From assembly GCF_001194135.2 (NCBI RefSeq), contig NC_068994.1, forward strand, positions 27,330,551 to 27,394,550: a stretch of 64,000 nt of DNA. The letters are read 5' to 3'. Below, one piece after another: positions 25,401 to 27,037 of the stretch (within the stretch, counting starts at the first letter, position 1; every line of letters begins with the position of its first letter). The position numbers and the translations under genes were made by a program. Origin of the DNA: Octopus bimaculoides (lineage: Eukaryota). The notes under the pieces were generated by a model. It saw nothing but the letters and a program-made list of their open reading frames with translations, was not told where the DNA came from and made no database searches.

Positions 25401-27037
25401 GTCGTTATATGCAGGGAAACAACTCTAAGTAAATTCTCTGCTCACAATAAGATTCATGCCAGTTATTTTCAGTATGTATATATGTGTATCCTGCTCACTT
25501 TTACCATCATTACAACTTCACAATTGTCTGTCTGCCTTTCAATGCAACATCTTTTCACTGCGAACTGCTAAAGATTCAAAACAGTATTTGTGAACTGAAG
25601 TCAAACTCTTCATGTCTTCATTTTTCATTACCTAAAGTCAATTTCAGAGTGGTCGTCCACTGTAAGCATGTAGCAATTACATTCCTTTAACTCTACTTTT
25701 CAAGTAGGTATTATATTGCCAATTTTTAACGTACCAATCATACTTCTCTCCGAAAAAATATCTTCTTTTGCTGTTGAATAAAATAAACTTGCAGAGGGGA
25801 GGTTTCAACGCCTTCCTTCAATTTCCTTACACCATTTATGTGGCTGTTTCTGACAAAAAATTTCACTTTCATGTAAAACAACTATATTTTGTAGTCATTA
25901 TCCATAATCTACTCCCAAAACACTTCAGTAGCTCTACTTTGCATCGCTTGCAAACTTATATGCTCTATGATCATTAAAGTGCAACTACCTCCACAATAAC
26001 CTGCCTTCAATTTGATTTTCCATTCTTAGGTTAATCAGAAGCATAAATTGGCATGCTACTCATAAAACTTCTCGGTAGTTCAATTATTTGGTGTAAAAAA
26101 TACCACCAAAGCAACTTAAACCATCAAAAGGAAAGATGCGTTTGCTAGCGTGTGTATGTATATATATATGTATTTCTATATAATAGTGTATTAAAATTTA
26201 TACAGAGAGAAGACCACCATGTGGACTTCTTACACTATTTTATTTTTATCCTGTATTCATATAGTTTATCGTGCAGTTACTGTTAATACTTCATTTAGAG
26301 AATTAACATTGCTTGTTTTCACCTTTTCGATATCAGTGAAGAATTTCACTGGAAAAGTAGATATAAGATTGCCAGGTTTTTGTCTCTCTCACCAGGGTCA
26401 GTAGCTATCGAACGCCGACGGAGGGAAATAACCCTGAAATCCGGATCCGTTCGTGCTGCAGATCATGGTGAGAGGGATAACTTCCCTTGGCAAACAGGAC
26501 ACAGTCGTGTGTCGATAAGCCAGCTGGAGGAGATGTCCTCCTGGGGCTAAAAGCAACAGTAACATCCACCCCTAGGGGTCAGCCACACTTAAGTGGCAAT
26601 ATACTACACTTTATCGTGCAGTTACTGTTAATACTTCATTTAGANNNNNNNNNNNNNNNNNNNNNNNNNNNNNNNNNNNNNNNNNNNNNNNNNNNNNNNN
26701 NNNNNNNNNNNNNNNNNNNNNNNNNNNNNNNNNNNNNNNNNNNNNNNNNNNNNNNNNNNNNNNNNNNNNNNNNNNNNNNNNNNNNNNNNNNNNNNNNNNN
26801 NNNNNNNNNNNNNNNNNNNNNNNNNNNNNNNNNNNNNNNNNNNNNNNNNNNNNNNNNNNNNNNNNNNNNNNNNNNNNNNNNNNNNNNNNNNNNNNNNNNN
26901 NNNNNNNNNNNNNNNNNNNNNNNNNNNNNNNNNNNNNNNNNNNNNNNNNNNNNNNNNNNNNNNNNNNNNNNNNNNNNNNNNNNNNNNNNNNNNNNNNNNN
27001 NNNNNNNNNNNNNNNNNNNNNNNNNNNNNNNNNNNNT

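What the first reader, a model, noticed from the sequence alone, without database searches (positions are those of the whole stretch)
26497..26550. Unassigned conserved RNA structure with compensatory base changes, present twice (26497-26550 + and 63916-63971 -)
Seen: GGACACAG--TCGTGTGTCGATAAGCCAGCTGGAGGAGATGTCCTCCTGGGGCTAA aligns to the reverse complement of 63916-63971, GGACACAGGTTCGTGTGTCACATAGCTAGCTAGAGGCGATGGCTTCTTGGAGCTAA, at 43 of 56 columns. The flanks show no obvious similarity. In the second hairpin all 7 substitutions keep pairing: three double compensatory changes (A-T to C-G next to the invariant GATG loop, G-C to A-T, C-G to T-A) and one G-C to G-U. The GACAC/GTGTC hairpin and the 3' GCTAA are invariant. 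The G-U pair points to this strand as the folded one. Inference: a selected RNA element shared by two distantly related mobile elements, such as a 5'UTR ribozyme, packaging signal or translation element. GCUAA recalls the J4/2 strand of HDV-like ribozymes at R2/RTE 5' ends, but I could not build the P2/P3/P1.1 pseudoknot, so it may be a different fold.
Basis: partly seen in the sequence, partly recalled or inferred. Interest (0 to 1): 0.7.

Follow-up and report, generated by a model that had tools for sequence, protein, structure and literature searches.

The report
Shared two-hairpin module in two repeats
Two otherwise unrelated non-coding stretches of this repeat-rich animal genome share a 54-56-base element whose two hairpins have been kept by matched base changes; it is most likely a working part of small mobile elements, not a new kind of RNA, and which class of element carries it could not be settled from two copies.

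Summary
26497-26550 (+) and 63916-63971 (-) align at 43 of 56 columns. The flanks are no more alike than shuffled sequence, and no third copy exists in the window. Both copies fold into the same two adjacent hairpins. The differences are sorted by structure. Hairpin 1 is invariant. The 4-nt linker is fully changed. The 13 aligned unpaired bases inside the two hairpins are invariant. All 7 changes in the hairpin 2 stem keep pairing: 3 double changes and one G-C to G-U. Random substitution reproduces this in about 2 of 10,000 trials, so a single-stranded fold has been selected.

What carries the module is unresolved. No Rfam family matches, including the HDV-like, hammerhead and twister models, and the topology rules out an HDV-like fold. 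No ORF or protein domain lies near either copy. No relative was found in any collection I could search.

My best reading (0.42) is an RNA module of non-autonomous retroelements, of the kind SINEs and LINE untranslated regions are known to share. The main rival (0.27) is the 3' end of a Helitron-like rolling-circle transposon: a 16-nt palindrome lies 9 nt from a CTAA, and similarity stops at that CTAA. Interest is modest.

The parts
26497..26550 (+). Module copy 1 (54 nt). Hairpin 1 spans 26498-26513: a 6-bp stem GACACA/TGTGTC with loop GTCG. The linker is 26514-26517. Hairpin 2 spans 26518-26548: outer stem AGCC/GGCT, an internal loop with a C-G pair and a T-T mismatch, inner 6-bp stem GGAGGA/TCCTCC, and loop GATG. 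The tail is AA.
   Evidence: Sequence; fold (-25.1 kcal/mol, z -3.7); pair table; covariance-model score 86.3 bits.
63916..63971 (-). Module copy 2 (56 nt). Hairpin 1 spans 63970-63953, with the same stem and loop GGTTCG. The linker is 63952-63949. Hairpin 2 spans 63948-63918, with inner stem AGAGGC/GCTTCT (one G-T pair) and the same GATG loop and internal-loop bases. The tail is AA. It lies 29 nt from the window end, so its upstream context is missing.
   Evidence: Sequence; fold (-22.0 kcal/mol, z -3.1); covariance-model score 89.1 bits.
26380..26480 (+). A long imperfect hairpin of 37 base pairs, about 100 nt, directly upstream of copy 1. It may belong to the same element. It is more stable on the + strand than on the - strand.
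   Evidence: Inverted repeat I1. Energy is -53 kcal/mol (z -5.4) on the + strand against -39 (z -2.4) on the - strand. It has 4 G-U pairs and no A-C mismatch.
26551..26609 (+). Sequence downstream of copy 1: an A-rich 16 nt (AAAAGCAACAGTAACA) followed by two small hairpins (CCCC/GGGG and GCCAC/GTGGC). It is not similar to the sequence downstream of copy 2.
   Evidence: z -2.2; flank test.
63806..63915 (-). Sequence downstream of copy 2: it starts with TT, forms a multi-hairpin region closed by CGGCAGC/GCTGCCG, and ends at a (TA)n microsatellite.
   Evidence: -35 kcal/mol, z -3.6 on this strand; z -5.0 on the other strand.
26265..26299 (+). Left copy of a 35-nt exact direct repeat (40 nt at 95%) with 345-nt spacing. 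The pair brackets a 310-nt segment that contains copy 1.
   Evidence: (family D1).
26610..26644 (+). Right copy of the same direct repeat. It runs straight into the N gap at 26645-27036, so its true length is unknown. It could be the start of a second 345-nt tandem unit, a long target-site duplication, or an assembly effect.

Best explanation
The module is a functional single-stranded element. I take it to be RNA, read on the strand given in the finding, and carried by two different small non-coding retroelements of SINE type or of the LINE-UTR-derived non-autonomous type. Such elements are known to swap and retain short 'body' or 'tail' domains while the rest of their sequence differs.

The inferred mechanism is a protein-recognition platform that the element's transcript needs in its life cycle, most plausibly binding by the partner retrotransposon's protein or by a host RNP protein. 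Hairpin 1 would be read by sequence, because it is invariant. Hairpin 2 would be read by shape plus a few fixed unpaired bases: the GAUG loop, the AG/U bases on the 5' side and the U/G bases on the 3' side of the internal loop. Its stems are free to change as long as they pair, and the linker is free.

What is shown: the shared fold, the compensated changes, the sorting of substitutions by structure, the lack of coding capacity nearby, and the highly structured context. What is inferred: that the molecule is RNA, that the carriers are retroelements, and that the role is protein binding.
For: The fold is shared and significant in both copies. All 17 pairs are kept, with 3 double changes and 1 single compensated change, at P of about 2e-4 under random substitution.

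Substitutions are sorted as in functional RNAs: hairpin 1 stem 0/12, aligned unpaired bases 0/13, hairpin 2 stem 7/22, linker 4/4.

Strand asymmetry favours the quoted strand.

Both copies sit inside longer structured, non-coding stretches: 26377-26609 folds at -97 kcal/mol with z -6.8, and 63806-63915 has z -3.6.

Similarity is an island with unrelated flanks on both sides, which is how SINE central domains are defined (PMC4758252, PMC4824008). There are precedents. One is a conserved stem-loop subdomain in V-SINEs of molluscs and arthropods (PMC4758252). Another is a conserved domain from the middle of RTE 5'UTRs that recurs in cephalopod Ceph-SINEs and in other LINE clades (PMC5786205).

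An A-rich stretch follows copy 1. A 9/10 match to the CORE/Ceph string quoted in PMC5786205 lies 3 nt upstream of copy 1; 1.3% of random windows score as well. The window is full of LINE fragments and SINE-like repeats.
Against: No tRNA, 5S, 7SL or snRNA head was found next to either copy (ARAGORN; Rfam).

There are no clear target-site duplications or terminal simple repeats. The only flanking repeat is 35 nt long and abuts a gap.

There are no other copies of either carrier in 64 kb, whereas the window's common repeat families occur 5-7 times.

The 23-nt Ceph/RTE string from PMC5786205 does not match significantly. I had no library of SINE or LINE sequences to compare against.

The same fold is predicted for single-stranded DNA. 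Similarity ends exactly at a CTAA that lies 9 nt after a 16-nt palindrome, which fits a Helitron 3' end.

The source organism was not established. The mariner fragment's named hits are insects, and the LINE fragment's hits are unnamed ENA contigs.
Confidence: 0.42

Rival explanations
1. The module is the 3' terminus of Helitron-like rolling-circle DNA transposons. The hairpins would form in the displaced single DNA strand and mark where transfer stops. Related families keep the terminal 30-60 nt while their interiors differ, and everything after CTAA is host DNA.
For: The hallmarks as listed in PMC4067079 and PMC11417382 are a 16-20-nt palindrome about 11 bp from the 3' end, a CTRR end, and a T as the next host base. 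Here the inner palindrome is 16 nt in both copies and lies 9 nt from the end of similarity, and that end is CTAA in both. The next base is T in copy 2.

Similarity stops abruptly at that point. Conservation of hairpin structure but not of its sequence is typical of such ends. The fold is stable with DNA parameters.

The geometry also fits Helentron/HLE2 right ends: a palindromic subterminal repeat 38-60 bp from the end and a stem-loop 8-35 bp from the end. Helitrons are reported in an octopus genome (PMC13282606), which matters only if the window is cephalopod.
Against: Copy 1 is followed by A, not T or TT.

No 5' end could be identified. The TC-rich start at 26385 is preceded by G. No second GACAC...GTGTC palindrome exists anywhere else in the window, including the 15 kb of gap-free sequence upstream of copy 1.

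No Rep/helicase remnant was seen, and no Pfam domain lies near either copy.

The supposed host flanks are themselves unusually structured. The C and T of CTAA are part of the covarying outer stem. Unpaired loop and bulge bases are invariant, which is more typical of RNA motifs. Hairpin-plus-CTRR signals are known to give many false positives (PMC11417382).
Confidence: 0.27
2. The two sites are members of a family of small non-coding RNA genes of the host, or an undescribed self-cleaving or regulatory RNA, and not parts of mobile elements. Copy 1 may lie in a 345-nt tandem gene unit.
For: Neither copy has a single broken pair, as expected under continuing purifying selection. Loops are conserved and stems covary.

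Copy 1 sits in a segment bracketed by a 345-nt-spaced repeat that may be the start of a tandem array. A TATAA string lies about 25 nt, and a T5 run directly, before the structured region. No feature of a mobile element could be shown.
Against: No Rfam family matches at E <= 10. At 54-56 nt the shared part is too short to be a whole gene, and the flanks are unrelated. No hammerhead, twister, hairpin or HDV-like core was found. The promoter-like strings lie in AT-rich sequence and may be chance. No relatives turned up in any collection searched.
Confidence: 0.1
3. [quoted passage not shown]
Against: No HDV-like, CPEB3 or drz covariance model, and no other model, matches either locus at E <= 10.

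The topology is wrong. Hairpin 1 is a closed 6-bp hairpin with a 4-6-nt loop and cannot enclose a P2 strand and a P3/L3.

The sequences after GCUAA differ entirely between the copies, and they share no partner upstream to form P2.

No LINE ORF follows either copy.
Confidence: 0.02
4. There has been no selection. The two sites would be ordinary decayed copies of one repeat. The matched changes would arise by chance or by templated (hairpin-directed) mutation of a DNA palindrome.
For: Only two sequences are available. Templated mutation within quasi-palindromes can change both arms together (established knowledge, not tested here).
Against: Random substitution gives the observed pattern in about 2 of 10,000 trials. 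The flanks are not alignable at all while the module is 77% identical. The linker is 4/4 changed while 25 stem and loop positions nearby are 0/25 changed. One change is G-C to G-T, which templated correction would not produce. The outer-stem pair that changed lies 24 nt from its partner.
Confidence: 0.04

Closest known systems
Conserved central ('body') domains of SINE superfamilies. [quoted passage not shown]
   Same: It is a short domain (40-70 nt) shared by elements whose other parts are unrelated. It persists across families and its function is unknown. Vhc is predicted to form a conserved hairpin with an internal loop. The Ceph/RTE domain sits in the middle of a UTR, not at an end.
   Different: No Pol III head, tail or target-site duplication could be shown for either carrier here. 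Sequence identity to any named domain could not be tested, apart from two short strings quoted in PMC5786205: one weak match and one non-match. Compensated stem changes of the kind seen here are not what those papers report for their domains.
3' tail stem-loops shared by stringent-type LINEs and their partner SINEs, recognised by the LINE reverse transcriptase (Ohshima et al. 1996 and Kajikawa and Okada 2002, as cited in PMC5786205).
   Same: It is a structured RNA element recognised by shape. It is shared between otherwise different elements, and similarity ends at the element's 3' end. An A-rich stretch follows copy 1.
   Different: No terminal simple repeat follows either copy, and copy 2 has no A-rich tail. 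The one LINE 3' end visible in the window (61120 downward, ending in (ATGT)n) has no such module.
3' termini of canonical Helitrons (HLE1) and of Helentron/Helitron2 elements (HLE2), as described in PMC4067079 and PMC11417382.
   Same: There is a 16-nt palindrome 9 nt from a CTRR (CTAA), and similarity ends there. The next base is T in one copy. An upstream palindromic repeat sits at the distance reported for subterminal repeats. Hairpin shape is conserved more than hairpin sequence.
   Different: The A/T (or T/T) junction fails in copy 1. No 5' terminus, partner repeat or Rep/helicase was found. The terminal CT is base-paired in a covarying stem, and unpaired bases are invariant.

Membership tests
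HDV-like self-cleaving ribozymes | Match to the family covariance models (HDV, CPEB3 and drz families in Rfam) | tested here: not met
   No match at gathering score over the window. No HDV-like match at E <= 10 in 26300-26650 or 63700-64000.
HDV-like self-cleaving ribozymes | Nested double pseudoknot: P1 encloses the 5' strand of P2 and P3/L3, and P2 is closed by sequence after J4/2 | tested here: not met
   Hairpin 1 is a closed 6-bp hairpin with a 4-6-nt loop. The sequences after GCTAA are unrelated between the copies and share no upstream partner.
Any described RNA family (Rfam 15) | Covariance-model match | tested here: not met
   The only hits were microRNA models on a (TA)n repeat, far below their gathering scores.
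Hammerhead retrozymes (tandem units with a hammerhead ribozyme) | A hammerhead ribozyme in each unit | tested here: not met
   No hammerhead model matches at E <= 10 in 26300-26650. I saw no CUGANGA core on reading the sequence by eye.
Canonical Helitron (HLE1) 3' end | A 16-20-nt palindrome about 11 bp from the 3' end | tested here: met
   The palindrome is 16 nt (6-bp stem plus GATG) and lies 9 nt from the end of similarity in both copies. The definition comes from PMC4067079.
Canonical Helitron (HLE1) 3' end | Terminal CTRR | tested here: met
   Similarity ends in CTAA in both copies. That this is the true element end is inferred from two copies only.
Canonical Helitron (HLE1) 3' end | Insertion between A and T, so the host base after the end is T | tested here: inconclusive
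   The base is T after copy 2 (63915) and A after copy 1 (26551).
Canonical Helitron (HLE1) | 5' end TC after a host A, and a Rep/helicase partner sharing the ends | not testable with these tools
   The upstream part of copy 2 lies outside the window. No boundary can be defined for copy 1 without further copies or an empty site. No Rep/helicase domain was found near either copy.
Helentron / Helitron2 (HLE2) | A pair of 11-18-nt (sub)terminal inverted repeats | tested here: not met
   No second copy of the hairpin 1 palindrome exists anywhere else in the window, including 15 kb of gap-free sequence upstream of copy 1.
Helentron / Helitron2 (HLE2) | A stem-loop 8-35 bp from the 3' end and a T-T target | tested here: inconclusive
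   The stem-loop distance fits. TT follows copy 2, but AA follows copy 1.
SINE | A 5' head derived from tRNA, 5S, 7SL or snRNA, carrying a Pol III promoter | tested here: not met
   ARAGORN finds no tRNA in the window. No Rfam match at E <= 10 lies next to copy 1. Only 29 nt upstream of copy 2 are available.
SINE | Target-site duplications and a LINE-like or A-rich tail | tested here: inconclusive
   A 35-nt direct repeat brackets 26300-26609 but abuts a gap. There is an A-rich 16 nt after copy 1 and none after copy 2.
SINE superfamily central domain | A short domain shared by elements with unrelated heads and tails | tested here: met
   A 56-column island at 77% identity lies between flanks that are no more alike than shuffled sequence. 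That the carriers are SINEs is not shown.
CORE / Ceph SINE domains | Sequence similarity to the domain | tested here: inconclusive
   Only the two strings printed in PMC5786205 were available. The 11-mer matches 9/10 at 26484-26493, and 1.3% of random windows score as well. The 23-mer is not significant at either locus.
V, Deu, Meta, MESC, Snail and Nin-DC SINE domains; Repbase/Dfam LINE UTRs and Helitron ends | Sequence similarity to the library entries | not testable with these tools
   No such library was on hand. The supplements of PMC4758252, PMC4824008 and PMC5786205 are not held.

The most novel reading that the evidence does not exclude
The module could be an undescribed class of structured RNA. 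One possibility is a retroelement RNA motif that recruits the reverse-transcription machinery. Another is a small catalytic or regulatory RNA with a new fold. Either would be conserved by covariation across families in this animal lineage and absent from Rfam.
Probability: 0.12. Interest if true: 0.6.

Novelty: new member of a known kind. Interest (0 to 1): 0.3.

Why it matters
If the retroelement reading is right, this is a rare case in which a shared 'body' domain of small mobile elements shows direct evidence of selection on an RNA fold: compensated stems and fixed loop bases. The function of such conserved SINE and LINE-UTR domains has been an open question since they were described (PMC4824008, PMC5786205). 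A domain with a clear, small and testable structure would give that question a concrete handle. If the Helitron reading is right, the finding is ordinary and useful only for annotating that family's ends. In both cases the module is a precise marker for finding and classifying the carrier elements in the source genome.

Tried and rejected
1. Rfam was searched at gathering score over the whole window and at E <= 10 around both copies. Nothing relevant matched. ARAGORN found no tRNA.

2. A search for more copies in the window used blastn, nhmmer with filters off, a fuzzy search for the hairpin 1 palindrome, and covariance model R1 with filters off. Only the two copies were found. A 14.5-bit hit at 23719-23773 (-) was rejected because its pairs are mostly broken and its flanks match neither copy.

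3. A search for relatives elsewhere gave nothing.
- Three reading frames of copy 1 were run as a protein query, with no hit.
- Exact degenerate patterns were scanned against metagenome contigs (2 scans), viral contigs (2) and prokaryotic genomes (1). These gave 0 hits, or 19 hits that cover only the pattern inside GC-rich bacterial genes. None of the 19 has hairpin 1, so they are chance matches.
- The quoted sequence strings were searched in the paper library, and only primers came up.

4. I tried to reach the source genome or close relatives through proteins. The LINE fragment gave 4 unnamed ENA proteins at 53-62% identity. Their three 20-kb loci share no DNA similarity with the window and hold no module. 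The mariner fragment's named hits are insects.

5. I tested whether the two copies form the inverted terminal repeats of one 37-kb element. They are in inverted orientation with the same outer end, but the flanking bases are not duplicated. Compensated divergence is also not expected of one element's two ends. This was rejected.

6. Extended homology into the flanks was rejected by shuffle tests. A possible ACYTCCCYTG match upstream, at different distances in the two copies, remains unproven.

7. No coding partner was found. There is no Pfam domain in any stop-free piece within about 3 kb of either copy.

8. Paralogous empty sites could not be used, because the sequence around copy 1 is unique in the window.
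Full report
**The observation**

The two sites read exactly as quoted. With the 2-nt length difference placed in the loop of the first hairpin, 43 of 56 columns are identical. 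MAFFT gives this alignment once three flanking bases are added on each side (alignment A4). Within the window the pair is found by blastn at E = 2.8e-6.

No third copy exists. A profile of the pair (nhmmer with filters off) and a covariance model with the structure (R1 with filters off) each return only these two sites, at 89.1 and 86.3 bits. The next hit scores 14.5 bits, at 23719-23773 (-). It has mostly broken pairs and flanks that match neither copy, so I treat it as noise.

The flanks are not alike. Local alignments of the upstream and downstream flanks score no better than shuffled sequence. The shared piece is therefore an island of similarity.

**The fold and the compensated changes**

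Each copy alone folds into the same two adjacent hairpins, at -25.1 and -22.0 kcal/mol with z-scores of -3.7 and -3.1. On the alignment, 17 pairs can be drawn and all are standard pairs in both copies. Sliding the partners by 1-3 columns drops pairing to 35-53%.

The 13 differing columns are distributed as follows:
- 2 are the loop length difference in hairpin 1.
- 4 are the whole 4-nt linker.
- 7 lie in the stem of hairpin 2.

The 7 stem changes form three double changes (A-U to C-G next to the loop, G-C to A-U, and C-G to U-A in the outer stem) and one G-C to G-U.

The rest of the module does not change. The hairpin 1 stem is 0/12 changed. The 13 aligned unpaired bases are 0/13 changed; these are the GAUG loop, the AG, U, U and G of the internal loop, and the aligned bases of the hairpin 1 loop.

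I simulated 11 random substitutions over the module, and separately 7 within hairpin 2. No broken pair together with at least three double changes occurred at a rate of about 2e-4 in both runs. With only two sequences the usual covariation tests have no power, and the tool's shuffle control can reach at best 55 of 500. The sorting of changes by structure is nevertheless clear: free linker, covarying stem, fixed loops. It is the pattern expected of a selected fold.

**Which strand, and RNA or DNA**

The quoted strand folds better than its complement. The values are -25.1 against -20.9 kcal/mol for copy 1 and -22.0 against -14.1 for copy 2.

Directly upstream of copy 1 lies a 37-bp, roughly 100-nt hairpin at 26380-26480. 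It is also much more stable on the + strand, at -53 kcal/mol (z -5.4) against -39 (z -2.4). It has four G-U pairs and no A-C mismatch.

This leans towards RNA read on the quoted strand. The evidence is thin, however, and the same fold is predicted with DNA parameters.

**Context**

The window is eukaryotic, AT-rich and full of microsatellites, and it contains seven runs of N. It holds several transposable-element remnants:
- LINE reverse-transcriptase fragments, including an RVT_1 match at 17168-17494, and a piece at 61120-61717 (-) whose relatives carry RVT_1 next to the matching gene.
- Mos1-type mariner fragments, with an HTH_48 match at 31880-32281.
- Several repeat families present 5-7 times.

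Neither carrier of the module recurs in the window. No stop-free piece within about 3 kb of either copy has a Pfam domain, so both copies lie in non-coding sequence.

The stretch 26377-26609 around copy 1 folds at -97 kcal/mol with z -6.8. In the part of the window I sampled for comparison (positions 1 to about 22,300), 3.4% of 230-nt windows reach z < -5. By their coordinates, the strongest of these overlap (TA)n and (CA)n tracts. The 110 nt after copy 2 are also structured.

A 35-nt exact direct repeat at 26265-26299 and 26610-26644 brackets a 310-nt segment that contains copy 1. Its right copy runs straight into the gap at 26645. I cannot tell whether this is the start of a 345-nt tandem unit, a long duplication or an assembly effect.

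Copy 2 lies 29 nt from the window end, so its upstream side is unknown. The LINE fragment 2.2 kb beyond copy 2 is a separate, 5'-truncated piece. It begins at a microsatellite and ends in (ATGT)n, and it is not an ORF served by the module.

**Search for relatives**

Nothing was found outside the window.
- A protein query made of three frames of copy 1 had no hit.
- Exact degenerate patterns found nothing in viral contigs and nothing in the first metagenome scan.
- A looser hairpin 2 pattern found 19 sites in bacterial contigs. They match only the pattern itself, inside GC-rich genes, and none has hairpin 1, so they are chance matches.
- The LINE fragment led to three 20-kb eukaryote-like loci from one ENA assembly, at 53-62% protein identity. 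They share no DNA similarity with the window and hold no module.
- The named hits of the mariner fragment are insects.

I therefore could not identify the organism or reach its genome.

**What it is not**

No Rfam family matches either locus, either at gathering score or at E <= 10. This includes the HDV-like, CPEB3, hammerhead, twister and hairpin ribozyme models, tRNA, and the small nuclear and nucleolar RNAs.

An HDV-like fold is also excluded by topology. Hairpin 1 is a closed 6-bp hairpin with a 4-6-nt loop and cannot be a P1 that encloses P2 and P3. What follows GCUAA is unrelated in the two copies and has no shared partner upstream.

The two copies are not the two ends of one large inverted-repeat element. 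There is no flanking duplication, and compensated divergence would not be expected between the two ends of one element.

**Best explanation (0.42)**

I take the module to be a functional RNA element carried by two different small non-coding retroelements. Short domains shared by SINEs whose heads and tails are unrelated are well documented. A 39-40-nt subdomain of the V domain is predicted to form a conserved hairpin with an internal loop in molluscs and arthropods (PMC4758252). The 3' half of the cephalopod Ceph domain comes from a conserved domain in the middle of RTE 5'UTRs, which also turns up in other LINE clades (PMC5786205). The function of these domains is unknown.

The pattern here suggests a protein-binding platform: one hairpin fixed in sequence, a second fixed in shape and in its unpaired bases, and a free linker between them. 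The partner element's protein is the most plausible reader. This last step is inference.

Two small further hints point the same way. An A-rich stretch follows copy 1. A 9/10 match to the CORE/Ceph string printed in PMC5786205 lies 3 nt upstream of copy 1, and 1.3% of random windows score as well.

Several points count against this reading. No Pol III head was found, and there are no clear target-site duplications or terminal repeats. No further copies lie in the window. The 23-nt Ceph/RTE string does not match significantly.

**Main rival (0.27)**

The module could be the 3' end of a Helitron-like rolling-circle transposon. As summarised in PMC4067079 and PMC11417382, canonical Helitrons end with a 16-20-nt palindrome about 11 bp before a terminal CTRR, and they insert before a T. 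Here a 16-nt palindrome lies 9 nt before CTAA, similarity ends exactly there in both copies, and copy 2 is followed by T. The invariant palindromic hairpin 1 also sits at the distance reported for the subterminal repeat of Helentron-type elements.

The evidence against is as follows:
- Copy 1 is followed by A.
- No 5' end or partner repeat can be found.
- No Rep/helicase remnant is nearby.
- The supposed host flanks are themselves structured.
- The terminal C and T are paired in the covarying outer stem.
- Hairpin-plus-CTRR signals are notorious false positives.

I could not discriminate further with two copies.

**Lesser rivals**

A family of small host RNA genes, or an undescribed ribozyme, has probability 0.10. 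It is favoured by the complete absence of broken pairs and by the possible tandem unit. It is disfavoured by the unrelated flanks and the short shared length.

Unselected change, by chance or by templated mutation of a palindrome, has probability 0.04. It is disfavoured by the simulation, by the G-T pair and by the changed pair whose partners lie 24 nt apart.

The HDV-like ribozyme has probability 0.02.

**Verdict**

The specific ideas of a 5'UTR location and an HDV-like ribozyme are not supported.

The module most likely belongs to a known kind of thing, either a shared functional module or a terminus of non-autonomous mobile elements. I found no described family that it matches. Interest is modest (0.3). 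It would rise if a genome-wide alignment showed strong covariation in an RNA that is transcribed on this strand and matches no known SINE, LINE or Helitron library entry.

Noticed in passing
window 26265-26299 and 26610-26644: A 35-nt exact direct repeat (40 nt at 95%) with 345-nt spacing brackets the segment that holds copy 1. The right copy ends exactly at the N gap (26645-27036). It could be the start of a tandem unit, a long duplication or an assembly artefact.
   Followed up: partly
window 26380-26480 (+): A 37-bp imperfect hairpin of about 100 nt lies directly upstream of copy 1. It is much more stable on the + strand (-53 against -39 kcal/mol) and has 4 G-U pairs and no A-C mismatch. 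No microRNA or other Rfam model matches it.
   Followed up: partly
window 1044-1620, 9806-10110, 28045-28277, 36898-37146, 43145-43577, 54449-54636, 57773-58357: An abundant interspersed repeat family has at least 7 copies at 65-86% identity, found on both strands, with internal short tandem repeats near 43350-43580 and 57940-58280. It is probably the genome's common SINE-like element and is unrelated to the module.
   Followed up: no
window 34866-35434, 42708-42921, 33576-33695, 31129-31265: Four large self-complementary palindromes: 573 nt at 87%, 216 nt at 93.5%, 120 nt at 100% (next to the gap at 33289-33575), and 144 nt at 75%. Their nature is unknown; they could be foldback elements or assembly effects.
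   Followed up: no
window 16875-17494 and 18443-18691 (+); 61120-61717 (-): These are LINE reverse-transcriptase fragments. RVT_1 matches 17168-17494 at E = 1.5e-4. The fragment on the - strand ends in an (ATGT)n tail at about 61040-61020 and is 53-62% identical to unnamed ENA proteins. Both are broken by stops and frameshifts.
   Followed up: partly
window 31880-32281 (+), 19852-20208 (-), 30746-31018 (-), about 27230 onward (+): These are Mos1-type mariner transposase fragments. HTH_48 matches 31880-32281 at E = 1.3e-7. The best named relatives are 'SETMAR-like' proteins of insects at 66-75% identity, which suggests a horizontally spread mariner lineage.
   Followed up: partly
window 1616-1826 and 4973-5183: A 211-nt segment is duplicated at 98% identity 3.4 kb apart, in direct orientation. 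More diverged copies lie at 55162-55284, 57211-57314 and 46009-46106.
   Followed up: no
window 47780-48262 (+): A 161-codon stop-free stretch contains YIG...R..NH...C..C-like strings that reminded me of GIY-YIG endonuclease domains of Penelope-like elements. Pfam gives no match at E <= 0.1, so this is unverified.
   Followed up: partly
window 26361-26365 and 26378-26382: A TATAA string lies about 25 nt, and a T5 run directly, before the structured region of copy 1. The surrounding sequence is AT-rich, so both may be chance. I noted them only as a lead for a possible transcription unit.
   Followed up: no
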